DNA from: Octopus bimaculoides
Lineage: Eukaryota
DNA length: 64,000 bases
Assembly: GCF_001194135.2 (NCBI RefSeq)
Contig: NC_068989.1
Span: forward strand, 68,957,636 to 69,021,635
Direction of reading: 5' to 3'
Each line of letters starts with the position of its first letter. Position 1 is the first letter of the stretch. Position numbers and translations under genes: made by a program. The notes beneath the pieces are model-generated. The model saw only the letters and a list, made by a program, of their open reading frames with translations, was not told the origin of the DNA and made no database searches. Below, piece by piece: positions 4,732 through 63,851 of this stretch.

Positions 4732-4775
<44 letters not shown>

Positions 4776-6418: not shown

Positions 6419-6451
<33 letters not shown>

Positions 6452-7767: not shown

Positions 7768-7812
<45 letters not shown>

Positions 7813-41500: not shown

Positions 41501-42139
41501 GGAAGAAAAACATCTGTGTATTTGTATGCACACGTCAATGTACTTGTTTGTAAACACGTATGTATGTTTGTGTAGTATAACATGCCGTGTTAAGCGATTA
41601 ATAATCCTTATGCGCTACAAACTTATCAGTGCTCTTAACAAACAACGGAGATTTAAGCTACATAAACACATATTGTTGCCCTTGTAGGATTAATGTTATT
41701 TATTCACTGAAGCATAAAATCCTTACATTTCATAATCTAAATCAGAAGTGGCCGCCATTTTAACATTCCAATACTCTAATTTTTTTTTTCATATACAACT
41801 TCAGCTGTACCATAAAAATAGTCTCCACCGCCATTCAATTTTTACAATTGTAGAGAGAGAGCGACAAAAAATTTCAGATTCAACATTCTTTACAAATATT
41901 TCAACATCAAACATGGGTCCTACACCAATTGAAATCATGTTAGTTATTAAAACGAAAACGGTAAAACATTAAGTGTACAAAGATGTCATTACCACTTACT
42001 TTACTTTACTAACATCAATAACCATCTAAAATATGGGAAGCTTTTCTGTCGCACATATTATAATAGTGTATATTATATTTATTTTATGTAGTATATATAG
42101 TATCATGTATATACAAACTGGGAAAGTTACTGACTGTAA

Positions 42140-42320: not shown

Positions 42321-42829
42321 CTTACACTAAATGTCATCACTGCGCTTGAAACAGCATTAGATTAACATGATAATGTGTGTGATATTCATAATGCATATAC
42401 AAAAATGGAATAGTGTTCAATCTCGTATGAACAGGGTACGACCAAAAATCCCCAGAACTACCAGTCTTGATGAATGTTTCAACAACAAACACAGTGTGCA
42501 CTGATCTAAACTAAAATGGTGACAAAAAAGAAATGATAAAATATTAGCTACATGGTGGAACCATTATCACAAGCGGCACAACAATGACCGTGTAAAATAT
42601 GGGATTTTTTTGCCGCACCCTTTACTTGTTTCAGTCATTGGACTGTAGCCAAGCTGGGGCGCTACATTGAAGGGTATTGTCGTACAAATCCATCCGCAGT
42701 CCTTATTAATTTTAAGTGTGGTGCTTCTTCTCTCTCCTCTTCTCGTCTCTAACAATTCACGAAAGAAAATATTTGTTCATGTCTGCACGTTGTTCGGAAA
42801 CGACAGGTGTAAATGTAACTCTGACAAAT

Positions 42830-44974: not shown

Positions 44975-45269
44975 GCATTTCAGCGTCTGGTAATTTACTA
45001 TGTTCAACTGAACGCATTTTCTCCTTAAATACTTTTAAATACGTCACAGACCATCTCCCACATCCATTAATCCTCCCCTATACACTCAGCAATGATCTTG
45101 ACAATGAACTCATCAGAACACGTGATGTCATCACCAGTGTAGATATGGAGAAGGCCTAATGTGGTTCAAGGCATTTTGCCCATTGATAATATCTAGTTAA
45201 TCTCATCAATGGATAATACCTCATTGGGGTCCCTCTAAATATGAAATAAATTATAAACCTGCAGATGTT

Positions 45270-45328
<59 letters not shown>

Positions 45329-45824
45329 CAAACATACATACATACATACATACATACATACATACATACATACATACATACATACAGATATATATATATA
45401 AAGTATATATATATATATATAAATATGTATGTATGTATTTATATTCTTTTAAATATTGAAATGCGTCACAGACTACCCCCCTCTTCCTTTTCATTTCATT
45501 AACATCTCACCTGCACATTGTTGTATTACAGTCTGACGTGGTCTTGGCAATGAAATTTAGGATAGACATGATGTCATTACCAGTGTGTACAAAAATGATT
45601 GTATATCTCAATGACCGTTGATAATCTGTTAATTTCTTGGCAAGAGCCCTTCACTGAGGTTTTCCTCGATATTAAGATTGTAATCAGTAATAAACCAGCT
45701 TATACTGGAGATGTTTATTCTCTAAAAGTAATAGATACATACATACATACAAAGAGAGAAAGAGAAAAAAGAATTTAAAAAATGGGAAGACGAGAGAGAG
45801 AGAGACATATACATATATATGCAT

Positions 45825-45877
<53 letters not shown>

Positions 45878-47030
45878 TTTCCTTCCTCCGCTTTTTCCTT
45901 CTTTGGACTTTCTTTGTTTCCGACGAAGAGCTCCGCTCGAAACGTCATATTCTCTTTCTTTCCTTTCCCGAGCGTCTAGTAACACAATCTGTATCACGTC
46001 CTCGCGTTGTTGTTTTTTTTTTGTTGTTTTTTTTTTGTCTTTTTCCTTTTTTGAACCTATATATATATATTCGCGAAATGAATCAGTAGCAGCACAGATT
46101 TCGTGAGGGACGGGTTAATAGATCCCTTATAATGGTGATACGTGCTGATGAAGCTAAGGCATATTAATATCAATGCAGAAACTAGTCCACGTAAATCCAC
46201 ATAAACGTAAGTTGATTGACTTAACCATTTTTGCCTTCATATTGATTTCTGTAGTAATTACCAGTGTAATTTTTGGCGATTTAATAACGGGTTTTGGCTG
46301 TTATTTCAAGCTGGTAGACATACTTAGTATGTCCTTTGATTAATCATAATCCCTCAGCTTTTTAAATGCTATTTTTGGCCAGCAGTCGCCTGTATCGTTG
46401 ATTCTGTTATTATCATTCTTAAATTAGTGACATTGGATAATAATAGAATTAATGGTACATTTTGTAAATTGATTTTACAACATACATATATAGTAATAGA
46501 TACAAACATACATACAAGGAGACAAAGAGAAAAAAGAATGAGGAATGGGAAGAAGAGAGAGACAGAGAGACAGAGAGACAGAGACAGAGAGACAGAGAGA
46601 CAGAAAGACAGAGACACAGAGACACAGAGACAGAGAGAGAGAGAGAGAGAGACTTATATATTCAAGTTCATTCCGATACATTTGACCATGACAGTGAAAA
46701 TTCTACACGTGTTACCAAAACAGACGTTTTTACCAGAGGTTAAAATGATGAGATTTTAAGCTCCAGTGAACATAGCTGGATAATCCTTTGTAAAGGGTTC
46801 GTTAAAGCCGAGTAATTTGCCGCTGAAATTAAGCTAGCAACAACACTGGGATTATCTAACTGTATACAACAGCACCAATGTTATCATATCTTATTATGTT
46901 CGTTGTTGTTGATGGTGATGGTGGTGGAGATTATGTTTGTTAGTGATGAGGGGATAAGGGAACAGGTGAATGAATGACTACTTAAATAATTGTCAGAACA
47001 TCAATGACATTGTCTCTATATTTGTAACAG
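44975..47030 (-). repeat. Three-unit cassette copy A (T1 45040-45272, T2 45445-45735, X 46678-46890); inverted duplicate of 58495-60520
   Basis: The reverse complement aligns block by block with 60233-60508, 59845-60149 and 58690-58890 in the same order. Confidence 0.9.
45920..45946 (+). ncRNA. Minimal type I hammerhead ribozyme motif (Penelope-type), probably inactive
   Basis: CCGACGA-A-GAGC tcc GCTC-GAAAC-GTC: core C(U>C)GANGA, 4-bp helix II, GAAA, palindromic ACGT helix III and GUC triplet. It lies in a pLTR-like block (about 45885-46062) between TA microsatellites. Confidence 0.65.
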
Positions 47031-47113
47031 TAATGCGATAAAGGATAGATGAAATTTAAATGTTTAAACTACTGCATTTCAAATAACCTTGGGTGAATAC
47101 AACCAAGGGTCTA

Positions 47114-47285
47114 ATACCGCCTTAAAGCGTGAGCATGCTGAGCAGTTGTCCAAAGGCCTCACAAGTCTGGTCTAGGGGTTCAATTCTGGTTTGTGTATGC
47201 TGTGGCTTGCTTACAAGTAAATAACTATTATAGGACCTAATGTACTAAGTTGTCCAGGGGCCTATAATGCTTCAAAGACGGCTAT
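47114..47285. mobile_element. Degenerate Harbinger-like MITE
   Basis: Imperfect TIRs ataccgccttaaagc / gcttcaaagacggctat; internal gttgtcca..ggcct repeats. Confidence 0.4.
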
Positions 47286-47915
47286 GCATCGGTCAGTTTT
47301 TCTTTTAAATTTTTTAGCAGTTTCAGTACTGCAGACATTCTGGGGGCATAGCTTTCGAAGTTTCTTTTAGTAAATAAATACTCCTCTCAGTACTTCATTT
47401 AATACTGTTCTTCTCTTTGATAGCACGTTGCCAACTCTAGAGAATGCTTGGTTCTTGCGATTATCTGGTCTTAATTGCCATTTGGTAATTGTGACACATC
47501 TTCTAAAGGCGAAGATAATTTTAATAAACGAAAAATGAAAAACAAAAAAAAAAAACAAGACAATTGCAGCAAAGCTGCGTGATAGTGGTGTCAGACGTAG
47601 CCTGCAGACCATCATATAATTTGTTTTATTCTCCTCTTCCGTTTTACTTTGACATGCGCATTGCGTTTTTATTTTTATGTTCAGTATGCACATGCACATT
47701 GCATGTTCATACTTCGCTCTCCGGTTCCTATTCAAAACTGTTTATATATCACAACCATCTCACGAACGTGCGTTCATGAGGAGCGCTTCGGACTCCGATG
47801 ATTGTGAAATAAAAGATTATGCTGTATCGTATTTGATATACCCTTATATGTCTATGCCGTTCAGGCACATACCATTGGGCACACTGCGTTATTTCTCTTA
47901 GCCCATTTCTGTTTA

Positions 47916-47976
<61 letters not shown>

Positions 47977-48692
47977 GGGGTGAGGGAGAAAGTACCTACA
48001 TGATAATGAATGCCTTTTACATGTCTTTTGATAAAACATATTACCGACGTGTATCAGTGAGTAGTAAATCCATCCAATAGATTACATACTTCAGTGAACA
48101 CAAAATATTAATCTCAGATGAAGTAAAACCAAATGTGTGTTTGCTTGTGTTTTTTTAGTTGTTCTTTCATTCTAGCCAGCTCACCTGATGCGTTAAACAC
48201 ACGCAAACACACACACATACGCTCATAGACTAACACACAAATACGCCTAGTCTTGCTCTCACTTTTCTTCCAACCCTCTCTTTCTCCATCTCTCTCCTTC
48301 TCTCTCTCCCTCTCTTCTTCTCTTTTTCTTTCTTCTTTTCTATACTTCTGCTTCCCACGCATGCGGGCTCGCTGTCTCTTTCTCATTCGAACGGAAGCAG
48401 ATTAATCAGTTATAAGAAATAAACTAGCAATATTTTTTGTTTTGTTTTTTGTTTTTAATCAGCGAAACATTTGCGTAGATCGAGATTCTGTAAAAGAATC
48501 ATCTTGTTATCAAAATATTAAATAATATCAAAATTTAATAAAAGCATTATCATATTGCGATGGTTGACTTTAGAAAGACTAATGATGTCAAGATGACATA
48601 AAACTGACATGGTAATGCTTACAAGTTTCTATTTACAGAAACTTAAAAGGTGTTCATAAATCCTATCGAAAACGGAACGAGAGGCTGACATA

Positions 48693-49492
48693 CAGTAATC
48701 ACTCGCCATATCGCGATTCACCTATCGCGATTCACCTATCGCGCCCTCAGTACATCGCGGATTTTTCTGGCTATTATATGTACATTTATATCGCGGACTC
48801 CTCAATATATCGCAGGTTTCTGCGGCCGATAGGTATTTATATTTTTATTTAGATTTTAATTATTTCTGTGGTAAAAAAGGCATCTTCACGCCTAAAAATT
48901 AATAAATTATTAAATGAAAATACAGTACAGTATAACACATTAATTAAAATATATTGAAAAAAAATATGTAGTGTTCTGTAGATGAGTAAACAAAGAATCG
49001 CACATACTGTATGGAAAACGAAATTCGGGAGGTGAGTGTGTAGTGTTGTCTTGCATTTATAATAAAATGAATATATACAAATTATAAAAATAATGAAAAA
49101 ATATATATAGTACAGTATCATTTCTACTTCACGGATTTTGACCCATTGCGGGTGTTTTTGGAATGTATCATCCGCGATAACTGAGCGATTGGAAATCCTC
49201 TTAGCCCCTTGTGGAGCATAGGGCCAGTTTCCATGGCGTATGTGTTTCCCCCAGCTGGACGGGACGCCAGTCAATCGCAACTTTTTACTCAAGAAACAGG
49301 AAGAAAGAGTGAGAGAAAGAGTACAACAGGGGTCGCCGCCACCCCCTGTCGGATCCTCGTGGAGCTTTAGGTGTTTTTTGCTCAATAAAGACACACAACG
49401 CCCGGTCTGGGAATCGAAACTGCAATCTTCCGACCGCGAGTCGGCTGCCCTAACCACTGGGCCATTGCGCCTCCACAATTGAGGGATTACTG
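48693..49492. mobile_element. Tigger/pogo-like MITE interrupted by a SINE
   Basis: TA-CAGTAATCACTC ... GAGGGATTACTG-TA (TIR 11/12); cgcgata subterminal motifs. Confidence 0.85.
49186..49476 (-). mobile_element. SINE family C (tRNA-Arg-like head + Meta-like tail) nested in the Tigger-like MITE
   Basis: Head nearly identical to 27886; tail gcgattgactggcgtcccgtccag; candidate TSD aactgag / aattgag. Confidence 0.88.
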
Positions 49493-50094
49493 TAAATTAA
49501 TTCAGCCTCCAATTTCCTCTCATCTAGCCATACTGTTCAGGNNNNNNNNNNNNNNNNNNNNNNNNNNNNNNNNNNNNNNNNNNNNNNNNNNNNNNNNNNN
49601 NNNNNNNNNNNNNNNNNNNNNNNNNNNNNNNNNNNNNNNNNNNNNNNNNNNNNNNNNNNNNNNNNNNNNNNNNNNNNNNNNNNNNNNNNNNNNNNNNNNN
49701 NNNNNNNNNNNNNNNNNNNNNNNNNNNNNNNNNNNNNNNNNNNNNNNNNNNNNNNNNNNNNNNNNNNNNNNNNNNNNNNNNNNNNNNNNNNNNNNNNNNN
49801 NNNNNNNNNNNNNNNNNNNNNNNNNNNNNNNNNNNNNNNNNNNNNNNNNNNNNNNNNNNNNNNNNNNNNNNNNNNNNNNAATGCCAAACTCCTATCCTAC
49901 TATGAAAAAACGTCAGCGGAAAGTTTTGTAGTTCACCCCATCGCTTCTCCCTTGACGTAAAAACTTGTGTGGGTAAGATCTTTCTTAGTTTAGTGGATAA
50001 ACACTTTCCCCGAATGCATAGGTTCAGAACAATATTTAATAGAATACTTTATGAGTTTTTTTTTTTTGTACTTTTCGGGCGCGAACCTATGTAA

Positions 50095-50343
50095 GGTCAA
50101 TCATCGTATGTGTGTGTGTATGTGTGTGTGCATCTATGTGTTTGTGTTTGTATTTGTCTATTGCCACTTGACAGCCGGTGTTGGTGTGCTTATGTCCCCG
50201 TAACTTAGCGGTGGTTCGACAAAAGAGACCGATAAAATAAGTACTAGGCCTAAAAAAATAAGTCCTGAGGCCGATTTGTTCCACTAAATCCCTTCAAGGT
50301 GGTGCCCCACCATGGCTGCAGTCAAATGACTGAAACAAGTAAA
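50095..50343 (+). mobile_element. SINE family B, 3' part
   Basis: cttgacagccggtgttggtgtg...gtaacttagcgg...catggctgcagtcaaatgactgaaacaagtaaaa. Confidence 0.85.
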
Positions 50344-51589
50344 AAAAAAAATGGGGTTCGAGAAAGACTAGTGAAATTCTTCGCCAATAGTTAGTGAGTA
50401 TAAATAGCTGAAAATTGAAATAAATTGATTTGCTCTGAAAAAGATAAAAATTCGGAAGATTCGGAAGCAGGACACTAATTGGAATGTTCTCTTCAGTAGA
50501 ATTTTCGTCTCTCACGGTGCGCACTGGTTTATTCCAAATTTAAGTTATTTTAATTGACACTGGGTTAAGCATGAATTTAATTATATCCGACATCAAAATA
50601 TTAAAGCTAGATCTCAGTCCATTCATCTAAGGCGAAGAACTAACCATAAATTCATTCTCTCTATTCGAGAAGTAAATTTTCAGGGTCATTGACAAATAGG
50701 TCTTCGTCCACCAGTGTTTTACATCCAGTTGTCAATGAGCCAGCAAAGGAACCTCTGCATAGTTGCACGACCTGCGAGGATCAGGAGCCAGAATTCTATT
50801 AAGTGACATTCTACTGTCTTTAAAAATGTTCAGTACATAATGTAGTCGTATATATTTAAAAACAAAACAAAATGTAGGGGATAGTCACGCAGTGACGTAA
50901 TGCTGAGTGTGCCGCCATCGGAGGGGAGCTACTTTATACACATGTGTTTACTTTAGTTGAATGTATGTTAGATTTAAAGAAGTGGGTGGCCAAAACCACT
51001 TTATGCCACTGTTGTTACGGCATCAATGCTTTTTATTATACGCCTGCTAAATCAGATTGTTGTGAGGTTAAATAACAGTCTAATCCCCTGCCCTTAAAAC
51101 GCACCCTTTATCTATTTCTTCAATCGATACGATAATGCACATTTCTATACCCTTATACCAAGGACCTTCGAGAAAAAATTTACGAGCAGGAACAAGACTG
51201 CTTTATGGCCCAATTTTCCTGAGAGAGTGTTAAGAGCTTAGAAGCCCGTAAGATATTCACGGCCTTTCTTCGTCCTCTGGACCAGTTGCCCATCACCACT
51301 CTCTTACAGGCCGTGTTTATACCCATTTATTCCACTCATTTTTCCTCCTCCAACTGTCATCCCACTTCTTGCCCGTAAAAAAGCTTAACTTTTTTGTTCT
51401 CCGACCTAGAGCGAATGGGAATATTCCGGAACTGCTCAACCATGTTTCGTGTCCAATCAAAGATTTACAACAATTTGGAAGTAACTTTAACCTTTACCTT
51501 TCTCATCTTATCTTTACCAACCAACAAAGGAACCTTCATACGATCTCTCGACCAGCATAACATAGCAGTCAAACCTCCTTCAAATCATA

Positions 51590-53123
51590 TGTTAACTATT
51601 TTTCACACTTTCAGGTCTTTCCTTTTTAAACATAATATCCCGCTCATTAATATTCTTGTCTCTGCGTCTGATGGAGCCCCTTCGATGATATGAAGATACA
51701 GGAGTTTTTCATCTCTGCTAAAGCGTGAAATTTCCCACTTGATACTAACTGCTTATTGTTTGACATACTGGCAGCATTTAGTGGCAAAAAATATGAACAG
51801 TAGATTGAATGATGCGCTTCAGTTAGTTATCAAGACTGTGAACAAATTGAAGTCCAGTCCCTTGTCTGATCGAATTTTCCGTCAACTCTGAGAAATGATG
51901 AGGACCATACTAAATTCTTATACCATACCGAAGTGCGGTGGCTGTCAAAAGGAAACTGTGTTTTACGCTTTGTTGAACTGTTTTACTGTTTATATAATAT
52001 CTTTTTCTTTGAAAATACTCCACTATCCGCTTCATTGGTGGCTGCAAGGAGCAATATCTTTTTTCTTTCTGATATATTCACAAAATAAAAATTATTTGAA
52101 TAAATTATTGCAAAGAAACAGAAAAACTCTCATTGATTGTAAATAATTTATCACTACCTTCATTTCGAAATTGGTGTTGTTTAAGACTAACAATTCAAAA
52201 CGTCAATTCCATCAATTTCCACAACTTGATTCTTTGAAAGTTGAATTGATTGATGAGTATTTAACTACATATCGTAACTATTTACAATTACTGCACGATA
52301 ACATGGTGGAGTGATTTCAAGATGTTGCTGCGCTGAATATTCCAAATTGGTATAGCAATCCGTTTGGGGTTGATGCAGTCATTGCGAGGATGATGTTCAG
52401 GAGGAATTGATAGAATTACAAATTGACAATGACGCCACAATGCGATATCATCGTAATGGCAAAGAAGGTTTGTGATACCATCAGAGTATACTGAATTCCT
52501 ACCCCAATCTGTGGTAACATCTGAAATTACTTTTGCTTGCCTTCCCCACTTCATACCTGGTTAAACCTGGTTTTAACCATGTTGGAACTTTATTTTCCCA
52601 TAAAAGAATTAGACTGGATGTAATACAACGAGGAGACTTGCGGCTAAAGTTGACAAGTTTGAAACCGAATGTATCTGCACTAGCTGCATTGCACCAGACA
52701 CATGGTTCTCATTAAAAAGTTTTATTCTTTTCCTTTATAATACAATCATTAATTATTTTTGCATCGGTAATTCTAATCAATGGTTCATTTGGGGAAAATG
52801 AATATCAGTGTAAAAGAAAGCGCAAGTTTCCAGAAGCTAATCTGTCTGCATAATATAGAGTTAACGCTAGAATTTTATTTACACTAATGGCAAAACTAAA
52901 CCCACAATAAAGGATTTGTAAACACCTGAATATTTAGTCCAAATGGCACCAACAGGGCAACGATATAGTGTGTGTGTCAAATGATACAGGGGGGCTGCTA
53001 GGGGATTTTGTGTTTGTGGGGGGTTGTGTCAGGGTTTTTTTTTACACAGGTGGGCGATGGAGCATTTCTTGACCGATAGGTGGGCGCTATTGCAATTTGG
53101 TGCGAAAAGTTTGTGAAACACTG
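51590..53123 (+). mobile_element. Decayed hAT (Buster/Charlie-like) transposon: transposase remnants and 3' TIR
   Basis: SDGAPSM, HLVAKNMN.RL..ALQ.VIK.VNK.K...L.DRIFRQL, ELIELQ, LLLAFPTSYLV...KRIRLDVIQRGDLRLKLT.L.PN....HQ.H.SH*; terminus tttgtgaaacactg (CAGTGTTTCACAAA on the minus strand). Confidence 0.85.
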
Positions 53124-53499
53124 ATATAGACTAACATATATTCAGGCCAACGAGAGGGTTTTTATGTTTTTATGCTAGAAGCAGTAACAGTTCGAGCGAC
53201 CAATCCTACATAAGTCAACTTTATCTTTCAGGCTCGATCAATAAAGTACCAGTTATGTACCAGAGTCGACTATTTTCTTTCTCTAGCTCCTTTCTGTCTG
53301 TCTCTTTCGTTCTGGAAGAATTCGACTGGGGTTCAGACATAGAGAGGAATGGGCTCCGACACATCTCAAAATGCTTAAAGCACCCCTTATATTATAACGG
53401 CACTCCCACAACTCTATGAGAGAGTTACAAGCCAATGCTATGAAATGGCAATTTTATGATACGGCTTGTTATTGAAGACAACGCTTCGTGCAAAATTCT

Positions 53500-53900
53500 G
53501 TTACGGTTGTAGTAATTTGAAGAGGTGACCAGACGTAACAGAGTAATTGTAATTAGCAAGACTGTTTGGATAAGGCTGTTCAGAAGGCTAGTAGAGAAAA
53601 GGTTGGATTTGCGAAAGGTTAAGAGTTTCATAACTGGTAACTGAAAGGATTAACACGAACCGTTATGAAGTTTATCATGACTACGACGAGTTGGAAATAA
53701 TGCATATCTAAGTTCTGTTAGAGAGTTTCTTGTTATAGTTGTAATAGGCTTACTATTAAGTTGCAGTGAAGGAGACAGTGAGATGAAAGCTCATACATGG
53801 TTTGCTATTGAAGCCAAGTTAGTTGTCTACCAAGAGTAGGGAAAAAGATAGAGGGAATAAGAAAGATTTTACCCCAGTGAAAGTTGCCGAGCAAAGAGAA
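53500..53900 (-). mobile_element. Possible L2-group LINE 3' relic
   Basis: Weak peptide resemblance (TRRSH, LLNSL) to L2 ORF2 C-termini; heavily decayed. Confidence 0.3.
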
Positions 53901-53937
53901 TGTTTTGCTACAGGTGTCTTATATTAATAACTGTGTT

Positions 53938-54157
53938 AAGGCGGCGAGCTGGCAGAATCGTTAGCACGCCGGGCTAAATGCTATGCGGTATCTCGTCTGT
54001 CTTTACGTTCTGAGTTCAAATTCCGCCGAGGTCAACTTTGCCTTTCATCCTTTCGGAGTCGATAAATTAAGCACTACGCAGTTGCGTACTGGGGTCGATC
54101 CAATCGACTGGCTCTCTCCCCAAAATTTCGGGCCTTGTGCCTAGAATAGAAAAGATT
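53938..54157 (+). mobile_element. SINE family A, complete young copy
   Basis: Full head (A/B boxes) through ggccttgtgcctagaatagaaaagatt. Confidence 0.93.
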
Positions 54158-55026
54158 AATAACTGTTAAAATTAGAACTCAATCAGAAACAATGGAATCG
54201 GATGAGGTATTTAAAAAAGAAAAAAAAAATTGATGCTGTATCACCTGAGACGGCAGCAACAATGAAAAGTAACATGCAGACCGAGATTTCGACTCCTGGT
54301 TGCGAATTCATAGTCCCTTTCACACAATTCCTTTTAATTTTCCAAGGAAAGCACAATAATTCGCCACAACAGTTCTATTTCAAATTCAAAACTATATCTA
54401 TTTTAAAAATATATATATTGAATGCCTATCCAGTTTCATCAACGATAGAGGAGACTAAACGTCTGCTTAGCAGGTCTCCAGATTGCTAATAACCTATTCA
54501 AAAATATTTTAACAATTTAATTAATGAGGTTAATTACTCGGAGACGTCTGATAATTAGTGATGTCTCTCTTTAGCATCTAGTTATAGATTATCTCAACAT
54601 CAACACACGAAATTTTAACTAAGATTAATTATTAACAGCAAGACGATCGTCAACCTGTTCATTCGTTTCTGTAATCAAGTTTATTACAATCTCGACTCTT
54701 CGACGCTTTTCCCGTTAATCCCGCCTCTTCTGTTTAAATCAACAAACTATTAATAACCTCTCTCTCTCTCTCCTTCTCTCTCTCCCGCCTTCTTTCCCTT
54801 TCTCACACACATACACACATGTATGAGCCTGTGCATATANNNNNNNNNNNNNNNNNNNNNNNNNNNNNNNNNNNNNNNNNNNNNNNNNNNNNNNNNNNNN
54901 NNNNNNNNNNNNNNNNNNNNNNNNNNNNNNNNNNNNNNNNNNNNNNNNNNNNNNNNNNNNNNNNNNNNNNNNNNNNNNNNNNNNNNNNNNNNNNNNNNNN
55001 NNNNNNNNNGTATGTAGATGTATATA

Positions 55027-55072
<46 letters not shown>

Positions 55073-56173
55073 ACACACACACACGCGCGCACGCACACAC
55101 ACGCACACACATATATATATATAACTGAACATTAAAAACACGCACAGATACACACACGCATACATACATACATCTCTTTTCTTCACAGACACACACACAC
55201 ACACACACACATATATATCGTTCTTATTTTCTTTATGACTCTCTTTTTCTCCCTTCCCCTGTCTCTTTCCTTCTCTCTCTCTCCTTCTACCCCCCCCCTC
55301 NNNNNNNNNNNNNNNNNNNNNNNNNNNNNNNNNNNNNNNNNNNNNNNNNNNNCCCCCCCCCCTCTCTTCTCTTCTCTTCTCACCACTCATTTACTCACTA
55401 ATATCTCTTCTACTCTCTCAGATCTATCTGCTAGCTTCTTTCTAAGCATCATGCAATAAACTGCGTCGCGAAACTTAATTTACTCTTTTAATGAATCTTG
55501 ACTTTTTTTTTCTCTGTTTTTCTTTTTTCTTCTTCTTCTTCTTTTAAACTATTTTAGTACTCTTTTATAGAACTGTGACTTTTCTATTCTGGTAACATAA
55601 TGCCTTCTTGTTATTGCATCATGAACTTCCTAAATATTTTGGTAAAACTTGACCTTCTTAACTATCCTGCAGATTAATAGATAAATAAATAAATAAATGA
55701 ATAAATAAATAAATAAATAAATAAATAAATCGATCAGTTATTCTTCGTAACCGATTGACCTTCATCCACGTGTAAAAGACAAAGAAAGGGAAAGAGAAAT
55801 TAAGGAGGAATTTCGAAGAACAGCTAGGGAGAGAAGAAAAACAGCGAAACAGACAGAAACAAAGCGGGGGAGAGAGGCTGTCTGTCTGTATGTCTGTATG
55901 TCTGTGTTATTTGTGAATATTTGTGTGTGTATAACTATATCTGTTAGCATGTTTGTATGTTTATGATTGTGTGTGTGTGTGTGTGTGTGTGGGTGTGTGG
56001 GTGTGTGTGTGCCGATATGTCTGTCAGCTGTGTGTGCATATATGTCTATATGTGTTTTCTATGTGCGTTCGCATATCTGTGTGTGTTATCTGTCGTGTTT
56101 GTGTGTGCGTATCTATTCTGTTATCTATGTGTGCGTTTGTGTTTCTATGTCCGTTACTTATGTGTACGTCTGT

Positions 56174-56220
<47 letters not shown>

Positions 56221-56282
56221 CTCTTTACTACCTACAAGAGGCTACACACAGAGGAGACAAACAAGGACAGACAAACGGATTA

Positions 56283-56445
56283 AGTCGATTATATCGACCC
56301 CAGTGCGTAACTGGTACTTATTTAATCGAACCCGAAAGGATGAAAGGCAAAGTCGACCTCGGCGGAATTTGAACTCAGAACGTAGCGGCAGACGAAATAC
56401 TGCTAAGCATTTCGCCCGGCGTGCTAACGTTTCTGCCAGCTCGCC
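56283..56445 (-). mobile_element. SINE family A, young copy
   Basis: Near-identical reverse complement of 53938-54110. Confidence 0.92.
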
Positions 56446-56604
56446 TCNNNNNNNNNNNNNNNNNNNNNNNNNNNNNNNNNNNNNNNNNNNNNNNNNNNNN
56501 NNNNNNNNNNNNNNNNNNNNNNNNNNNNNNNNNNNNNNNNNNNNNNNNNNNNNNNNNNNNNNNNNNNNNNNNNNNNNNNNNNNNNNNNNNNNNNNNNNNN
56601 NNNN

Positions 56605-56654
<50 letters not shown>

Positions 56655-57831
56655 TGTGTGTGTGTGTGCGTGTGTGTGCGCGCGCGCGTATGCTATCTGT
56701 GTGTATATGTATGTATATGTGGCTGTGTGGCTATGTTATCTGTATGTGTCTGATGGCTGTCTCTGTTATTTGTATGAATATATGTGTATATTTGTGTGTT
56801 ATCTGGGCGTGTATGTTTGTGTATATATATATATCTGTTATGTTTATGCATATGTATCTGTGTGTGAGTATGTCTATGTGTGTTATCAATGTGCGCGCGC
56901 ATATCTGTGCGTGACATCTGTTGTGTTTGCGCGTGTGTATTTATTCTGTTATCTACGTATGCGTTTGTGTTTCTATGACCGTTACTTGTGCGTGCGTGCG
57001 TGCGTGCATATGTGTATATTTTTGTGTTATCTGGGCGTGTATGTTTGTGTATATGTATATCTGTTATGTTTCTCTGTATGTATCTGTGTGTAACTATGAG
57101 TCGGCTCAAGTAAAAATTTTTTAAAAAAATAAATTTTTTTAACATAATACCCCCCCCCCACACACACACACACACATGTAGTATTGTTTCATCCCGGATT
57201 AATATGTTGTGTTCACTGAAATATGTAATCTAATAAGTAATTTGTAATGCAAAAAAAAAAAGAAAAAAACTGGAAAGAACAGTCACTGACGTGGCTAAAT
57301 ATTTCATATATGTCTATGTGTATGTGTGTGAGTATATGTATACATACGTAAGCATGTATGTATAAACATATATATGTTTGTGTGCATGTATGTATACATG
57401 CATAAAACTAAGTATGTATAAGCGTAAATGTGCGAGTGTTGTGTATGTGTATGTGTGTGTGAGCAAGCCGAAACTTCGAAGTCACTGTCAACTTTTCCCT
57501 TATAAAAATTTAATAAACATGTAGTCTACTAAAAATTCATTGAATAATACTTTGGTCTGCTGTTAAATTGTTTCCTTTTCCGTATATTATTTTATATAAA
57601 AACAAGCATTAAGTATCTAAAGGCCAAAATGGCCGAAATCTGGCATTCATCGCAAGGATGGATTTTCGTCTTCCTCTGATATATATTATCTGTTTTTTAA
57701 AACATAGTACGTGCACAAGAGATGTTATCTGAGGACAAATACTGCAGTGACTGGTCTATCAACAGTGTATATACATTAAGTATGATACAGTGATCGCTAT
57801 TTTAATTTCCTGAAGAGATATCTAAACAAAC

Positions 57832-57957
57832 AATAGAGGTTTCTCACTTCCAACTGTTGGATGACCGTTGACTCTATCAAGTTTACGTGAAGCGCCGATC
57901 ACGTGAACTTGATAGAATCAACGGCCATCCAACAGTTGGAAATGAGAAACCTCTATT
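57832..57957. repeat. 126-bp near-perfect palindrome (59-bp arms, 55/59 identity, 8-nt loop)
   Basis: aatagaggtttctcac...tttacgtga-agcgccga-tcacgtgaac...gagaaacctctatt. Confidence 0.92.
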
Positions 57958-58494
57958 CTTTGTCTCGAGCTAATCGACTTTTTTGTTTTCCACATGAAAC
58001 GGAAAATAAGGCTGGAGAAGAAATGCCTGTCGCAAAGTGTGTTTCTTAAAAGATGGAAGTCTGTAGCAAGTATGTTGCGAGTGAAAGAACCGATCTAAAC
58101 GAGAACCAATAAAAGGACAAAGCAAAGTCTTCAGTGTGAGTATGTGGTTTGTGGGGTCGACCCGGTCCTCCGTTTCATTTTTTGTAAATCACTCATTCTC
58201 ATTTAATTGTATATATTTTGATTGTTTGTTCATTCATACATTTCATCTCATTCGATCCCCTGACCCAATGTTTGTTTTGTCTGTCCTCCTATCGTCCCCT
58301 CTTTTTCTCAACCTCATGGTTAATAAAGAAATTGACTCTATCAAGTTTACATGCCCTTTGACAGAACTTTTCTTTTTTTCGTCTTGCAGGGTATCCAGCG
58401 AAAACCACCCTCCTTATCAAACAGGTTTGGTACGGTTGCCAGTTTAGTCGCCATCAGCCCGACCATGCAACAGTTTGTATTGGGTTACATGCTA

Positions 58495-60179
58495 CCAATA
58501 TTACAAACAGTGACCTGATTTACATACATACGTACATACATACAGACATAGACGCGTACATATCAAGTAAATTATTTAAGTCAATGACCTTTTCTCCAGT
58601 CCTTCGTTACCACTATGAACACAACCCCTACTACTACTAACACCACCACCAACAACAACAATAACAAACATATTAAAGCAACACAGTAACATCAACATCG
58701 TTGGAACAGTCAGATAATCTCTGTGAACTTGCTAGTTTAATTATAATGACAAATTAGTCGGCTTTAACGAACCCTATACATAAGATTATCCAGCTATGTT
58801 CACTGGAGCTTAAAATCTCTTCGCTTTAGTCTATTGTAATAACGTCTGTTTCCAAAGCACGTGTAGAATTTTCACTGTCATGGTCGGACTTTGTAGAAAG
58901 TAGTATAATGTACGAGAAATTTTTTATATGTATGTGTCTGTATATTCTTTTATTCTTTTATTTGTTTCAGTCATTTGACTGCGGCCATGCTGGAGCACCG
59001 CCTTGGGGGTGGGGGGTGGGGGGGTCTTAGTTGAACAAATCGACCCAAGGACTTATTTTTTAAAGCCTAGTACTTAATTCTATCCGTGTCTTTTGCCGAA
59101 CCGCTAAGATACTNNNNNNNNNNNNNNNNNNNNNNNNNNNNNNNNNNNNNNNNNNNNNNNNNNNNNNNNNNNNNNNNNNNNNNNNNNNNNNNNNNNNNNN
59201 NNNNNNNNNNNNNNNNNNNNNNNNNNNNNNNNNNNNNNNNNNNNNNNNNNNNNNNNNNNNNNNNNNNNNNNNNNNNNNNNNNNNNNNNNNNNNNNNNNNN
59301 NNNNNNNNNNNNNNNNNNNNNNNNNNNNNNNNNNNNNNNNNNNNNNNNNNNNNNNNNNNNNNNNNNNNNNNNNNNNNNNNNNNNNNNNNNNNNNNNNNNN
59401 NNNNNNNNNNNNNNNNNNNNNNNNNNNNNNNNNNNNNNNNNNNNNNNNNNNNNNNNNNNNNNNNNNNNNNNNNNNNNNNNNNNNNNNNNNNNNNNNNNNN
59501 NNNNNNNNNNNNNNNNNNNNNNNNNNNNNNNNNNNNNNNNNNNNNNNNNNNNNNNNNNNNNNNNNNNNNNNNNNNNNNNNNNNNNNNNNNNNNNNNNNGT
59601 ATATATATATATATATTTGCATATATGTATATATTCAGAGAGAGAGAGAAATAGAGAGCTGTATATATATAGATATATGAATGTATATATGTATGTAATT
59701 ATGTTTTTCTTAGAGTTTTATGCAAGTTCTTCGAATGTATGTATGTATGTATGTATGTATGGATGGATGGATGGATGGATGGATGGATGTGTGTGCGTGT
59801 ATATATATATATATGCATGTATATGTATGTATGTATGTATGTATGTACCTATTACTTTTAGAAAATAGACATTCCCAGTATAAGCTGGTCTATCACTAAT
59901 TTCAATCGTAATATTGAGGGAGACCTCAGTGGAGTACTCTTGCCGGGAAATTAACAGATTATCAACGGTCACTGAGATATGCAATCACCTTTGCATTCAT
60001 CCGCACGCTGGTGATGACATCACGTGTATCTTAAATTTCATTGCCAAGACCACGTCAGACTGTAATAGAACAATGTGTAGGTGAGATGTTAATGAAATGA
60101 AAAGAAGGAGGGGGTAGTCTATGAAGTATTTAAGTATTTAAAAGAATATACATACATACACACGTACATACATACGTAC

Positions 60180-60212
<33 letters not shown>

Positions 60213-60520
60213 TGTATGTATGTATGTATGTATGAAACATCTGCAACTTTACAACTAATTCCATATTTAGGGAGACCCAACTGATTTGTTCTTCTCGAAA
60301 GATTAATGAAATATTATCAATGGATAATATACCTTGAAATACATTTGGGTTTGTTCACATCTACACTGGCCGTGACATCACGTGTCCTGATGATTTCATT
60401 GTCAAGATCATTGCCGAAGATGCAAGTGATGGTGTGCAAGTGGGTTATTAATAGAATTAGGAGGTGGTCTGTGACGTATTTCGGTATTTAAGAGAAAATG
60501 CAATTACCATAGACGTACAA
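58495..60520 (+). repeat. Three-unit cassette copy B (X 58690-58890, T2 59845-60149, T1 60233-60508)
   Basis: Inverted homology to 44975-47030; the units are also mutually homologous around agattatc..tcactg and cacgtgt..tttcattg. Confidence 0.9.
58945..59112 (-). mobile_element. SINE family B, 3' part, inserted in cassette copy B
   Basis: cttttatttgtttcagtcatttgactgcggccatgctggagcaccgcc is the reverse complement of the family B 3' end. Confidence 0.85.
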
Positions 60521-60953
60521 GCACACCCGTATGTTCATTCATATATAGATATATCCATATATACATACATATATCATACATACATATGTACATACACACT
60601 TATAGATATTCTTAGAAAACGTGTAGAAATGCAGACATACGTCCATACATAAATGAGATTTGCAACTCGATTTCAAGTAATGCCAACGCTTGGTTGTTCT
60701 ATTACACAAGAGAAGCACTGATACGGCTGTTCAGTACTGCTAGGGACTTACACTATCTTGTACAGATGTGGCATTGATGGGCGACTTTTTCAGTAGGTGT
60801 TATTGTTTTACATACACACACATATATATATATATATATATACATAAAAACATATACATAAATATATATAGAGAGAGAGACTTAGAAATATTTATATATA
60901 TNNNNNNNNNNNNNNNNNNNNNNNNNNNNNNNNNNNNNNNNNNNNNNNNNNNN

Positions 60954-60992
<39 letters not shown>

Positions 60993-61419
60993 TTGGTGTG
61001 ACTTTAAACTGCAACCGATAGCGTGACACTTGTACGGGAGTTCCAAGGTTTTGAGGAGTGTGGAACCACCACTTAGCTATTATTGTTCCCAGATCTACTC
61101 TGACCTGGGAATAGCACTTGTTAGGGTTCCAGCTACGTGTTAATTAGCACGTGAACCACTAGCAGTGAAGGAACCCTAGCTATCGTTAGAATTTCCGTCT
61201 TGAGGAAGGTAACCTCGTATAAATAGAAAACCTGATGTGCAGTTGGTTTCTGCAGGTTTCAACTTCAGTTGTTCCTCTAAGTCTTATAGCTGATTGCGCT
61301 GAGAAGTGAGTTCGGCGTTGTGCAACACTTTATCCGCTGAAAACAAATTCACGCACAAGAACTTCTTGGACTCTCGGAACGTTAGCGCAGACTTACTGAG
61401 TTTAGGAAGTAGTCTTCTG

Positions 61420-61452
<33 letters not shown>

Positions 61453-61814
61453 CATGCATGCATCATACAGATACATGATTGTCGTTTTTATACAAGCAGC
61501 CATTTTGCTTTCTTTCAGTTACTGTTATTAATCCTTTTGATTTCAGCGTCGATGGAAACATACTATCATGTAACCATAGCAGAAAATTGACAAAATTGCT
61601 TATTTTCTTTTTCTTTTTCTGTTATCGACCAATCAGATCGCCTACTTTTGACACGTTTCTTTTTTCGATGAACAACTGAACAACTCCTAGAACCTATTTT
61701 TCTCGAATTTAAGGTACTGTTTTCTAAACATTCAGTCAAGTTTTAAAGGAATGCAATAGAATTCCACGCTTCACAAAACGCCGAACTCTCACAATTAACA
61801 CGCACGCAAATGCA

Positions 61815-61852
<38 letters not shown>

Positions 61853-61974
61853 TACATACATACATTCTCTCGTGCACCCATGTGCTTATATACACATTTG
61901 AACATAGAATGTAAAAAGCTGGAAGAAATACCAGCTCTCTAGATTCTCNNNNNNNNNNNNNNNNNNNNNNCGAA

Positions 61975-62119
61975 GCCATCAACCCCAGTACCTGACTGGT
62001 TCTTTATTTTATCAGCCCTCAAAGGGAGGATGTGCAAAGTTGGCATTTGAACTCAGGGGCTAAAGATCCGGTAGAAATGCCGTAATCCAATGTACTAACG
62101 ATTCTGCCAGCTGACTAGC

Positions 62120-62190
<71 letters not shown>

Positions 62191-62845
62191 TTTTTCTAAT
62201 TTTGGCACAAAGTCGGAAATTTGGAGAGAAGGTGGTAAGTCGATTACATCGACGCTAGTACTTGTCTCGTACTTAATTTTATTGACCCTGAAAGGATAAA
62301 AGACAAAGTTGATTTCGGCGTTATTTGAACTCAGACCGTAAAGGGTCGGAAGAAAGACCGCAAAACATATCGTCTGATGCACTAATGATTCTACCAGCTC
62401 ACCGCTTTGCTTCAAATTTGGGCACGAGGCCAGCAATTTTGTGGAGAGGCAGCAAGTTGATTACATTGACTCCCCACACCCTCTCCCACTCTCAGTAGTT
62501 GAGTGAGACTTATTTTATCGATTTCAAAAGAATGAAAGGCAAAGTCAACTTGCCAGAATTTGAAATCAGAACGTAACGAGCCAGGGAAAATGCTGCGAAG
62601 TATTTTGTCCGACATACAAATGATTCTTTCAGATCATCATTCTAACAATGAGAACAACTACAGTGACAATCGTAATGTCTTCTGAATTGAGCACAAGGCT
62701 GGAAATATGGAAGAAAAAAAAAGGTGAGTCAATGCCCTAAACTCCAGTTGACTTTAGCAGGTTTGAAATCAAAACGTCACGAGCCGGAACACATACTGCA
62801 AATAATTTATTTCGCAACATTGCAACGAATCTGCCAGCTCATTAA
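61975..62845 (-). mobile_element. Tandem array of about 4 head-to-tail SINE family A copies
   Basis: Repeated gaaaggc/gacaaagtt...atttgaa(c/a)tcagaac...ctgccagctc blocks, with an (AAT)n tail at 62119-62190. Confidence 0.8.
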
Positions 62846-62859
62846 TAATGCAACATAGT

Positions 62860-63085
62860 AATATTAGTGTTGCTGTAACAATCAGATAATCCCAGTGTAG
62901 TTACTAGCTTAATTATAACGGCAAATTAGTCGACTTTAACGAACCCTTTACATAAGATTATCCAGCTATGTTCACTGGAGCTTAAAATCTCTTCATTTTA
63001 ACCTCTCGTAAAAACGTCTGTTTTAGTAACACGTGTAGAATTTTCATGGTCAGACTTCGCAGAATTCACTAGAATATACGAGATT
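62860..63085 (+). repeat. Third copy of unit X (possible start of cassette copy C)
   Basis: ctttaacgaaccctttacataagattatccagctatgttcactggagcttaaaatctc is nearly identical to 58760-58820 and to the reverse complement of 46750-46810. Confidence 0.92.
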
Positions 63086-63091: not shown

Positions 63092-63137
<46 letters not shown>

Positions 63138-63175
63138 TGTATACATATGTATGTATGTAAATATGAATGCATAAA

Positions 63176-63212
<37 letters not shown>

Positions 63213-63851
63213 GCGTGTACACATATATACATACATACAAATTATAAAATCTGGTAATTAATCATATATTAATTAATATCGATTAATTATCAGGAGGCCA
63301 GCACATCTAAAGAATCAAAGAGATTCAGAAATAGTATCTGCAATCTCAGGGGATTAAGGTACATTTTTAAAAAATAACGTTGACCACTAACGTGNNNNNN
63401 NNNNNNNNNNNNNNNNNNNNNNNNNNNNNNNNNNNNNNNNNNNNNNNNNNNNNNNNNNNNNNNNNNNNNNNNNNNNNNNNNNNNNNNNNNNNNNNNNNNN
63501 NNNNNNNNNNNNNNNNNNNNNNNNNNNNNNNNNNNNNNNNNNNNNNNNNNNNNNNNNNNNNNNNNNNNNNNNNNNNNNNNNNNNNNNNNNNNNNNNNNNN
63601 NNNNNNNNNNNNNNNNNNNNNNNNNNNNNNNNNNNNNNNNNNNNNNNNNNNNNNNNNNNNNNNNNNNNNNNNNNNNNNNNNNNNNNNNNNNNNNNNNNNN
63701 NNNNNNNNNNNNNNNNNNNNNNNNNNNNNNNNNNNNNNNNNNNNNNNNNNNNNNNNNNNNNNNNNNNNNNNNNNNNNNNNNNNNNNNNNNNNNNNNNNNN
63801 NNNNNNNNNNNNNNNNNNNNNNNNNNNNNNNNNNNNNNNNNNNNNNNNNNN

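What the first reader, a model, noticed from the sequence alone, without database searches (positions are those of the whole stretch)
44975..63085. Locally amplified three-unit cassette (X-T2-T1): inverted duplication plus a third start
Seen: three non-TE-like blocks of 200-290 bp, separated by microsatellites, occur in the order X, T2, T1 at 58.7-60.5 kb (+) and mirrored at 46.9-45.0 kb (-). Flank homology extends the arms to about 2 kb, about 11.5 kb apart, and X recurs at 62860. The three units are themselves homologous (agattatc..tcactg; cacgtgt..tttca(t/c)tg(t/c)ca), so an ancient unit was triplicated and the triplet then duplicated. T2 carries an AG|GTGAGA donor-like site in both copies (60081; 45510 on minus). 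One frame gives a shared G.DITC...FI.K peptide in T1 and T2. The opposite strand gives cag/tag acceptors and a signal-peptide-like HLLILLITHLHTITCIFG-NDLDNEIIRTRDV in T1b, and X copies differ by a frame-preserving 6-nt indel. Most copies contain stops or frameshifts in either orientation. Inference: either exon relics of a lineage-specific, tandemly evolving multigene family (possibly secreted peptides), a spliced ncRNA cluster, or a repeated cis-regulatory module. I cannot tell which from sequence alone.
Basis: partly seen in the sequence, partly recalled or inferred. Interest (0 to 1): 0.75.

Follow-up and report, generated by a model that had tools for sequence, protein, structure and literature searches.

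The report
Conserved non-coding repeat cassette in octopods
The repeated blocks are real, non-coding, and occur in the same order upstream of the same orphan gene in a distantly related octopod (Argonauta), so they look like an old, conserved array of regulatory or non-coding-RNA modules rather than exon relics or a fresh duplication; their genome-wide copy number could not be checked.

Summary
Two head-to-head arms (48150-45014 minus; 57160-60501 plus) each carry four collinear units, X', X, T2 and T1. A third X lies at 62843-63083.

The units are 74-91% identical between arms. The 1.0-1.3 kb spacers between them show no similarity.

No unit has an open frame. Substitutions show no codon periodicity. 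The unit translations matched no protein in the database searched. No Rfam family matches and RNA folding is unremarkable.

The key new result is conservation. A 329-aa ORF 19 kb away (24589-25578, minus) is a cephalopod-only orphan gene. Upstream of its Argonauta hians orthologue, on the gene strand, lie two tandem X'-X-T cassettes with the same subtype order and X'-X spacing. Their signature motifs occur almost nowhere else in either sequence.

Best reading: an old array of constrained non-coding modules, duplicated separately in each lineage. They are most likely cis-regulatory (CACGTG, ACGT-core and GATTA motifs). Spliced non-coding exons are the main functional rival.

A decayed dispersed repeat family is not excluded, because no octopod genome could be searched. 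The inverted orientation depends on scaffolding across N gaps.

The parts
48043..48150 (-). X'b: outermost unit of arm b. Signature GATTAAT..GTGTTCACTGAAGTATGTAATCT.
   Evidence: BLAST 48078-48150 matches 57232-57160 at 82%. Two-species X-core profile E = 0.002. Alignment with the Argonauta X' units.
46684..46926 (-). Xb. The core at 46681-46791 carries block A (GGATTATCCAGCTATGTTCACTGGAGCTTAAAATC) and block B (ACGTCTG..CACGTG..TTTTCACTGTCATG|GT). It is preceded by a (CAN)n stretch.
   Evidence: E = 1.6e-31.
45442..45751 (-). T2b.
   Evidence: nhmmer E = 1.8e-68. 84.5% identical to T2a.
45009..45274 (-). T1b.
   Evidence: nhmmer E = 8.9e-71. 74-82% identical to T1a.
57160..57232 (+). X'a: outermost unit of arm a.
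   Evidence: (E = 0.0033).
58641..58917 (+). Xa (core 58778-58888), preceded by (CAN)n at 58620-58665.
   Evidence: E = 1.1e-29.
58929..59113 (-). SINE copy inserted between Xa and T2a, cut off by the gap. It is not part of the cassette.
   Evidence: Matches other SINE copies at 14414-14569 and 50200-50351. Sequence read.
59114..59598 (.). Assembly gap (485 N) between Xa and T2a. The adjacency across it is scaffold-level only.
59832..60153 (+). T2a. Carries TGATGACATCACGTGT, TTTCATTGCCAAG, CCACGTCAG, AG|GTGAGA and GGTAGTCTATGAAGTATTT.
   Evidence: (E = 1e-74).
60233..60510 (+). T1a.
   Evidence: E = 8.3e-80.
62843..63083 (+). Xc: a third X, closest to Xb (89-91%), with a 6-nt deletion in block B. 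Any T2c would fall in the gap 63395-63851 or beyond the window end.
41684..41735 (+). Possible degenerate extra block A (GGATTAAT..ATTCACTGAAGCATAAAATCC) with no block B. Borderline.
   Evidence: Profile E = 0.019. Sequence read.
24589..26074 (-). Neighbouring orphan cephalopod gene (ORF 24589-25578) and its conserved proximal promoter or leader (25579-26074). This is the synteny anchor and the putative target.
   Evidence: 71% identical to the Argonauta hians hypothetical protein. Nucleotide alignment 24576-25932 and 25937-26074 to L001. Four-species upstream alignment.

Best explanation
The finding is an old, octopod-conserved array of non-coding sequence modules.

All modules derive from one ancestral unit of about 110-130 nt with two blocks:
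- Block A: (G)GATTAT(C), then GT(T)CACTGRAG, then AATC.
- Block B: an ACGT-core site, then CACGTG, then TTTCAYTGYCAWG.

Before Octopus and Argonauta split, this unit had already diversified into an ordered cassette X' - X - T... upstream of a cephalopod-specific orphan gene. Afterwards the cassette was duplicated separately in each lineage. It is head to head, with a further X, in this genome. It is in direct tandem in Argonauta.

The units have stayed recognisable while the DNA between them has been replaced or has decayed.

The mechanism I think most likely is that the units are cis-regulatory modules. They would be clustered binding platforms for bHLH(-ZIP) factors at the CACGTG palindrome, for bZIP/CRE-type factors at the ACGT-core sites (TGACATCA, CCACGTCA, GTGACGTA, ACGTC), and for a homeodomain factor at GATTA. 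They would act on the neighbouring gene or drive local non-coding transcription.

Shown: repetition, order, synteny, motif retention, and the lack of coding or RNA-structure signal.

Inferred: selective constraint, factor binding, and the target gene.
For: 1. Synteny.
- The X profile hits the Argonauta locus L001 only upstream of the orthologous gene and only on the gene strand: 1821-1928 (E = 1e-18) and 5970-6075 (E = 3e-18), plus weaker hits.
- With a two-species profile, X' at 692-786 and 4462-4570 score 3e-17 and 1e-15.

2. Subtype order and spacing are conserved.
- X'-to-X distance is 1.13 and 1.51 kb in Argonauta, and 1.32 and 1.59 kb in the window.
- The X' signature (GTGTTCACTGAA.T.T.TAATCT) is shared between species and differs from that of X.
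- T-like units ending in TTTCAYTGTCAAG follow X in Argonauta at 2139, 6313, 6562 and 6760.

3. Motif specificity.
- TTTCAYTGYCAAG with up to 1 mismatch: 6 hits in L001 against 0.22 expected, all plus strand, within 1913-6772. In the window, 6 hits against 0.49 expected, and these are exactly the X, T2 and T1 units.
- GTTCA[CG]TG[GA] occurs only in X and X' units, apart from one reverse-strand hit at L001 722 inside the first Argonauta X'.
- 6 of the 13 CACGTG sites in the window lie in 1.7 kb of units (P = 1e-7). In Argonauta it is 5 of 8 (P = 1e-7). CpG as a whole is not enriched.

4. Islands of conservation.
- Units are 74-91% identical between arms (z > 75).
- The 1.0-1.3 kb X'-X spacers are not microsatellite and show no similarity (z = 0.1).
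- Identity within units peaks over the motif blocks, at 0.93-0.95.

5. Neutral benchmark.
- Fourfold sites of the neighbouring ORF differ at 41% between the two species (K = 0.59).
- Apart from TEs, only the promoter and X align between the two upstream regions.

6. Coding and known-RNA readings fail.
Against: - No octopod genome could be searched, so the number of X, X' and T copies elsewhere is unknown.
- SINE families shared by the two species also give cross-species hits of 85-89% in these loci. Cross-species similarity alone is therefore not proof of constraint.
- Over the whole 113-nt X core, Octopus-Argonauta identity is about 70%, against 59% at fourfold sites. Fisher P is about 0.08, which is weak. 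The 87% figure for blocks A and B was chosen after seeing the data.
- Only block B of the T units is found in Argonauta. The T 3' block GGTRGTCTGTGACGYATTT is absent there.
- A borderline extra block A at 41684-41735, on the other strand, hints at some dispersal.
- The transcription-factor assignments are recalled consensus motifs, not tests.
- There are no expression, chromatin or binding data.
- The decapod-like loci L002-L004 carry no such units in the upstream sequence held (10 kb in L002, about 1.1 kb in L003, 0.24 kb in L004).
Confidence: 0.4

Rival explanations
1. The units are non-coding exons of a spliced long non-coding RNA, or alternative 5' leader exons of the neighbouring gene. 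Arm b would be transcribed on the gene strand. Arms a and c would form a divergent paralogous transcript.
For: - Island-like conservation separated by unalignable spacers is the usual exon-intron pattern.
- In all five X copies of both species the conserved core starts right after an AG (acAG|GATTATCC, aaAG|GATTATCC, taAG|ATTATCC). It ends at G|GT (TGTCATG|GTC, TGTCAAG|GTTTG), where conservation stops.
- All four Argonauta T units end in CAAG|GTTTG.
- T2 has AG|GTGAGA in both copies.
- A mini-ORF in X keeps its ATG and its stop across species: ATGTTCACTGGAGCTTAA against ATGTTCAGTGG(A/T)GCTTGA.
- In Argonauta, and in the gene-proximal arm here, the units are on the gene strand.
Against: - Octopus T units have no GT after block B (CAAG|ACC, CAAG|ATC).
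- In T2, 92% identity continues past the proposed donor.
- X' lacks consistent AG and GT boundaries.
- In Argonauta the X unit is split by a microsatellite of about 110 bp.
- The gene has its own proximal promoter, conserved as far as the decapod-like contigs.
- There are no transcript data. AG and GT are frequent by chance.
Confidence: 0.22
2. The units are relics of an old repeat with no present function. This could be a composite SINE- or MITE-like element with internal microsatellites (comparable to the dipteran 'mini-me' elements or bivalve microsatellite-associated repeats), or a decayed local satellite. They would be kept similar by orthology, slow decay or gene conversion.
For: - Blocks of 100-290 bp separated by microsatellites, and copies in both orientations, at 74-91% identity. 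This is typical of old TE copies.
- Cephalopod genomes are more than 50% repeats (PMC9023564), and O. vulgaris about 66% (PMC13282606).
- SINE families are shared between the two species in these same loci.
- A possible stray block A lies at 41684-41735.
- Weak A-box and B-box-like strings occur on the antisense strand of X. This comes from my own reading of the sequence and was not tested.
Against: - If the cassette were one mobile element, or a young segmental duplication, the internal spacers should be as similar as the units. They are unalignable.
- No tRNA-like head is found by ARAGORN or Rfam.
- No shared sharp termini or target-site duplications are visible.
- Copies lie only upstream of the same gene in both species. 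In Argonauta all are on one strand and within 6.1 kb of a 26 kb locus, while the real SINE there has 12 or more copies spread throughout.
- Subtype order and spacing are conserved.
- Independent insertion next to the same gene in both genomes would need tens of thousands of copies.
Confidence: 0.32
3. The units are exon relics of a tandemly evolving family of small secreted peptides.
For: - Short shared peptides exist: G.DITC..FI.K on the sense strand and NDLDNE(I/L)IRTRDV on the antisense strand.
- In one frame X ends in DYP(A/V)MF(T/S)GA-stop, with the stop kept in both species.
Against: - Stops occur in every frame of every unit, and T2b carries a frameshift relative to T2a.
- There is no excess of third-position changes (5/4/4).
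- No protein hit at E <= 10.
- No gene is annotated over the Argonauta array.
- The 'peptides' coincide with the palindromic DNA motif TGATGACATCACGTG.
Confidence: 0.03
4. The mirror arrangement is a scaffolding artefact and the arms are really in direct tandem, as in Argonauta.
For: - The arms lie in different contigs separated by four N gaps.
- The Argonauta cassettes are direct repeats.
Against: - Three separate contigs (X'a-Xa, T2a-T1a, Xc) agree in orientation with one another.
- Arm b agrees with the gene strand, as in Argonauta.
- Either way the paralogous units are real, because they differ by 9-26%.
Confidence: 0.15

Closest known systems
Clusters of conserved non-coding elements or tandemly duplicated cis-regulatory modules (homotypic or 'shadow' enhancers) near a target gene
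   Same: - Short islands conserved in order and orientation next to an orthologous gene in two distant species.
- They are surrounded by unalignable DNA.
- They are dense in palindromic factor-type motifs.
- The modules are duplicated.
   Different: - Function is untested.
- Conservation is about 70% over the core, far below the 95% threshold used for coleoid CNE candidates in PMC9023564.
- The modules are built from one reiterated unit and joined by microsatellites.
- They were found only in octopods here.
Microsatellite-associated composite repeats (dipteran 'mini-me' elements; bivalve pearl/CvA/HINE-type elements). Named from my own knowledge, not tested against their sequences.
   Same: Conserved blocks of 100-300 bp alternate with microsatellites, and copies occur in both orientations.
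   Different: - Those families are high-copy and dispersed, with whole-element homology between copies.
- Here the non-microsatellite spacers do not align between copies.
- Here all copies sit at one syntenic locus in the sequence available.
Arrays of alternative first exons, each with its own promoter motif (for example clustered protocadherin or UGT1A variable exons)
   Same: Reiterated units on the gene strand upstream of a gene, each with a conserved motif followed by a GT.
   Different: - The units are non-coding and only about 100 nt long.
- The GT is not conserved in the Octopus T units.
- The gene has a conserved proximal promoter.
- No splicing evidence exists.
Ordinary inverted segmental duplication
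   Same: Two head-to-head arms with collinear homologous blocks.
   Different: - Homology is confined to four short islands per arm.
- The cassette itself is older than the duplication and is shared with Argonauta.

Membership tests
Protein-coding exon family | An open reading frame kept across copies | tested here: not met
   Stops in all six frames of all seven units, and an 8-nt indel shifts T2b relative to T2a.
Protein-coding exon family | Excess of third-position or synonymous substitutions | tested here: not met
   5/4/4 by codon position, and 4 synonymous against 8 non-synonymous codon changes in the best shared frame.
Protein-coding exon family | Homologous proteins exist | tested here: not met
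   No hit at E <= 10 among 5.8 billion proteins. The short query segments give this search low power.
Transposable element (SINE, MITE or composite) | Many dispersed genomic copies | not testable with these tools
   No octopod genome is searchable here. There are no further copies in about 50 kb of window or 19 kb of L001 outside the arrays, apart from one borderline block A. Two metagenome scans returned 0.
Transposable element (SINE, MITE or composite) | Copies homologous along their whole length, with common ends and target-site duplications | tested here: not met
   Spacers inside the cassette are unalignable. Homology fades into microsatellite or SINE sequence without shared sharp ends.
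Transposable element (SINE, MITE or composite) | A head derived from tRNA, 7SL or 5S | tested here: not met
   ARAGORN found 0 tRNAs. Rfam gave no hits in the units even at E <= 1.
Structured small RNA or miRNA cluster | A match to a known family, or unusually stable folding | tested here: not met
   Rfam sub-threshold hits fall only in microsatellites. Fold z-scores run from -0.69 to +0.35.
Conserved non-coding element or cis-regulatory module | Conserved at a syntenic position in a distant species | tested here: met
   X and X' lie upstream of the orthologous gene in Argonauta hians, on the same strand, in the same order and at the same spacing.
Conserved non-coding element or cis-regulatory module | Evolves more slowly than neutral DNA | tested here: inconclusive
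   Units against spacers between arms: z > 75 against 0.1. X core 70% against 59% at fourfold sites, P about 0.08.
Conserved non-coding element or cis-regulatory module | Bound by factors, open chromatin, or reporter activity | not testable with these tools
   Only motif content is available (CACGTG enrichment).
Spliced non-coding exons | Conserved AG..GT boundaries and transcript evidence | tested here: inconclusive
   AG..GT bounds the X core in 5 of 5 copies, but not the Octopus T units or X'. No transcript data.
Inverted segmental duplication | Two arms with collinear homology in opposite orientation | tested here: met
   Four collinear units per arm. The orientation rests on scaffolding.

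The most novel reading that the evidence does not exclude
An octopod-specific regulatory or non-coding-RNA locus built by reiterating one two-block unit of about 120 nt. The unit order X'-X-T would have been held for the whole Octopus-Argonauta divergence, and the cassette amplified independently in both lineages. It would control, or be co-transcribed with, a cephalopod-only orphan gene. It might include a conserved five-codon upstream ORF (MF(T/S)GA-stop) in the X unit.
Probability: 0.25. Interest if true: 0.55.

Novelty: new member of a known kind. Interest (0 to 1): 0.4.

Why it matters
Few conserved non-coding elements are known in cephalopods, and their regulatory DNA is largely uncharted. 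PMC9023564 found only 1187 coleoid candidates.

This cassette is compact, recognisable by motif and conserved in order. It lies next to a gene with no relatives outside cephalopods. That makes it a concrete, testable candidate for lineage-specific regulation, whether as an enhancer array or as a non-coding transcript.

Its independent amplification in two families would be a small case study of how regulatory modules multiply. If the units instead prove to be a dispersed repeat, the finding reduces to an ordinary old repeat cluster.

Tried and rejected
- Coding: six-frame translation, a protein search with a concatenate of all open segments, and a codon-position test were all negative.
- Known RNAs: Rfam at gathering score on the whole window, and at E <= 1 on the cassettes of both species, matched only microsatellite-derived miRNA families in the spacers. 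ARAGORN found nothing.
- RNA structure: no stability signal on either strand of X or T2. My own shuffle script timed out.
- Genome sampling to estimate copy number: I used a reverse-transcriptase fragment from 34.7-35.3 kb as a protein query, hoping to fetch random octopod loci. It found nothing and spent the last protein search.
- Metagenome scans for block A and block B returned 0 hits.
- The supplement of the O. vulgaris repeat annotation paper holds no consensus library.
- Similarity between the units and the neighbouring gene or its promoter: none.
- The decapod-like loci L002-L004 carry no units.
- The T-unit 3' block is not present in Argonauta.
- The apparent reverse-strand similarity between spacers (z = 8.3) is only a (TG)n run.

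Full report
CONTEXT

The window is 36% G+C and has 24 N gaps (7775 N). It is full of microsatellites and SINE copies. It comes from an octopod. The only long ORF that looks like a real gene (24589-25578, minus strand, 329 aa) is 71% identical to a hypothetical protein of Argonauta hians. It is 53-56% identical to two proteins from unnamed ENA and Logan contigs. A full HMMER scan of 1.84 billion cluster representatives found only that one cluster. Pfam and the PDB give nothing above threshold. The gene is therefore a cephalopod-restricted orphan.

THE OBSERVATION

A dust-filtered self-BLAST and repeat finding confirm the reported blocks:
- T2 plus its spacer: 45353-45751 matches 60234-59832 at 84.5%.
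- T1: 45014-45324 matches 60501-60181 at 74%.
- X: 46684-46926 matches 58885-58641 at 79%, and matches 63052-62859 at 89%.
- Xa against Xc: 80%.

Profile searches find exactly four T units and three X units in the 64 kb. T1 and T2 align along their whole length. X shares with them only ordered motifs, and the profiles do not cross-hit.

The donor-like AG|GTGAGA, the 6-nt deletion in Xc and the short shared peptides are all present.

EXTENSION OF THE ARMS

A profile built from X cores of both species picked up a fourth unit, X'. It lies 1.3-1.6 kb upstream of X in both arms (48043-48150 minus; 57160-57232 plus; 82% identical).

The arms are therefore 48150-45014 and 57160-60501, head to head and 9.0 kb apart. 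Xc lies 2.3 kb beyond T1a on the plus strand.

GAPS

- Arm b lies in one gap-free contig (44796-49541).
- In arm a, X'a and Xa share one contig and T2a and T1a share another.
- The 485-N gap between those two contigs has a truncated SINE on its left and (TA)n on its right.
- The relative orientation of the arms depends on scaffolding over four gaps.
- The 9-26% divergence between arms rules out a haplotig or collapse artefact.

NOT CODING AND NOT A KNOWN RNA

- Every frame of every unit has stops, and T2b is frameshifted relative to T2a.
- In the G.DITC..FI.K frame, substitutions fall 5/4/4 by codon position.
- A concatenate of all open segments hit nothing at E <= 10.
- Rfam and ARAGORN find nothing in the units. 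Sub-threshold Rfam hits are microsatellite hairpins.
- Fold stability is ordinary.
- The shared 'peptide' is the translation of the palindromic DNA motif TGATGACATCACGTG.

THE ARGONAUTA LOCUS

I fetched 10 kb on either side of the Argonauta orthologue (L001). The X profile hits it only upstream of the gene and only on the gene strand:
- 1821-1928 and 5970-6075, E about 1e-18.
- With the two-species profile, X' units at 692-786 and 4462-4570, E = 3e-17 and 1e-15.

Each X is preceded by a (CAC/ACC)n stretch, as in the window. It is followed by short T-like units ending in TTTCAYTGTCAAG|GTTTG at 2139, 6313, 6562 and 6760.

The 13-mer TTTCAYTGYCAAG, which I derived from the Octopus units, has 6 matches in L001 against 0.22 expected. 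All are on the plus strand within 1913-6772.

The X' signature is shared between species and is distinct from that of X. The X'-to-X distance is 1.1-1.6 kb in all four cassettes.

So the subtypes and their order predate the split. Copies of the same subtype within a species are closer to each other (84-92%) than to the other species (about 70%). This means the cassette was duplicated, or homogenised, separately in each lineage. It is tandem in Argonauta (1771-2171 matches 5920-6345) and head to head here.

The abundant Argonauta SINE has 12 or more copies scattered over all 26 kb, whereas the X, X' and T units are confined to 0.7-6.8 kb.

The decapod-like loci have no such units in the upstream sequence held. 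They do share the gene's proximal promoter region.

CONSTRAINT

- Between the two arms, the units score z > 75 in local alignment. The non-microsatellite X'-X spacers (1.0-1.3 kb) score z = 0.1.
- Identity within units peaks over the motif blocks.
- CACGTG is retained in 6 of 7 Octopus units and in 5 Argonauta units. This is 6 of 13 and 5 of 8 of all occurrences in the respective sequences. CpG in general is not enriched.
- The neutral yardstick is 41% difference at fourfold sites of the neighbouring ORF.
- Against that yardstick, the 70% identity of the whole X core is only weakly significant (P about 0.08). The case for constraint therefore rests mainly on the island pattern, the motif retention and the conserved order.

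INTERPRETATION

The data fit an old array of constrained non-coding modules.

I favour cis-regulatory modules (0.40). Block B carries an E-box palindrome and ACGT-core sites. Block A carries GATTA and GATAA-type cores. The T units add CRE-like TGACATCA, CCACGTCA and GTGACGTA. These factor assignments come from general knowledge of consensus sites and are not tested.

Spliced non-coding exons are the main functional rival (0.22). The X core is bounded by AG and GT in all five copies of both species. It also holds a mini-ORF whose ATG and stop are both kept. The T units and X' do not follow that pattern, and no transcript data are available.

A functionless old repeat family remains a serious rival (0.32). 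Its decisive test is genome-wide copy number, which I could not run. The unalignable internal spacers, the absence of a small-RNA-derived head or common ends, and the syntenic clustering argue against it.

Coding exon relics are essentially excluded.

VERDICT

- The coding reading is rejected.
- The regulatory and non-coding-RNA readings are strengthened by cross-genus synteny.
- Function is unproven.
- Interest is moderate.

Noticed in passing
window 24589-26074 (minus); L001 9380-10943: The 329-aa ORF is a cephalopod-only orphan gene. It has one cluster among 1.84 billion representatives and no Pfam or PDB match above threshold. Relatives end in a hydrophobic C-terminal tail that is missing from this exon. 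About 500 bp upstream of the ATG is conserved in four cephalopods, including GGATTAAC and TTCACGTTAC blocks.
   Followed up: partly
window 26060-26150 (minus) and L001 8834-9340: Trinucleotide runs, (GTA)n and (GTT)n, sit at the same position just upstream of the conserved promoter region in both species. (CAN)n runs precede X in both. These microsatellites appear to persist at orthologous positions.
   Followed up: no
window 58795-58812, 46774-46757 (minus), 62967-62984; L001 1839-1856, 5986-6003: There is a mini-ORF inside X. ATGTTCACTGGAGCTTAA (MFTGA-stop) in Octopus corresponds to ATGTTCAGTGG(A/T)GCTTGA (MFSGA-stop) in Argonauta. Both the ATG and the stop are kept, with TAA changed to TGA. 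The substitutions are too few to test.
   Followed up: partly
window 45727-45805 and 46492-46568: A 78-bp direct repeat (87% identical) covering the junction (CT)n..(TATG)n..ctattact brackets about 690 bp of unique sequence between Xb and T2b. This suggests an insertion or a local duplication within that spacer.
   Followed up: no
window 60146-60233, 63093-63242, 59795-59857: Spacers made of (ATAC)n followed by (GTAT)n form perfect hairpins. They give sub-threshold Rfam hits to microsatellite-type miRNA families (mir-297, mir-466, mir-3149, mir-1277). These are composition artefacts, not evidence for miRNAs.
   Followed up: yes
window 32727-33104 (minus): An intact N-terminal HTH_48 / HTH_Tnp_IS630 domain of a mariner or Mos1-type transposase (Pfam E = 6e-14).
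   Followed up: partly
window 34700-35290 (plus): A reverse-transcriptase fragment of a non-LTR element, broken by at least three stops. It had no word-sharing relatives in the protein index.
   Followed up: partly
window 16058-16271, 53938-54165, 56281-56445, 62169-62408, 62488-62635, 23851-24027, 33472-33666, 41299-41454, 42200-42324, 7-123, 973-1119: A SINE-like family of about 220 bp has 11 or more copies in the window. A second family is at 7613-7786, 14173-14292, 21397-21471 and 23187-23360, and a third at 14363-14569, 21513-21728, 50132-50351 and 58929-59112. Parts of these families also match the Argonauta locus at 72-91%.
   Followed up: partly
window 18621-18942, 20107-20278, 35321-35481, 57826-57963: Four self-complementary (palindromic) stretches of 138-338 bp, 72-88% complementary. 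The last one lies in the X'a-Xa spacer. They may be foldback or MITE-like elements.
   Followed up: no
window 27884-28079 and 49292-49476: An inverted repeat, 84% identical, overlaps a 209-aa ORF (48849-49478, minus) in the centre between the two arms. It is probably part of an unclassified repeat.
   Followed up: no
L001 20616-20939: A tandem repeat with a period of about 50 bp, 90-93% identical, downstream of the annotated Argonauta gene range (L001 10001-16351).
   Followed up: no
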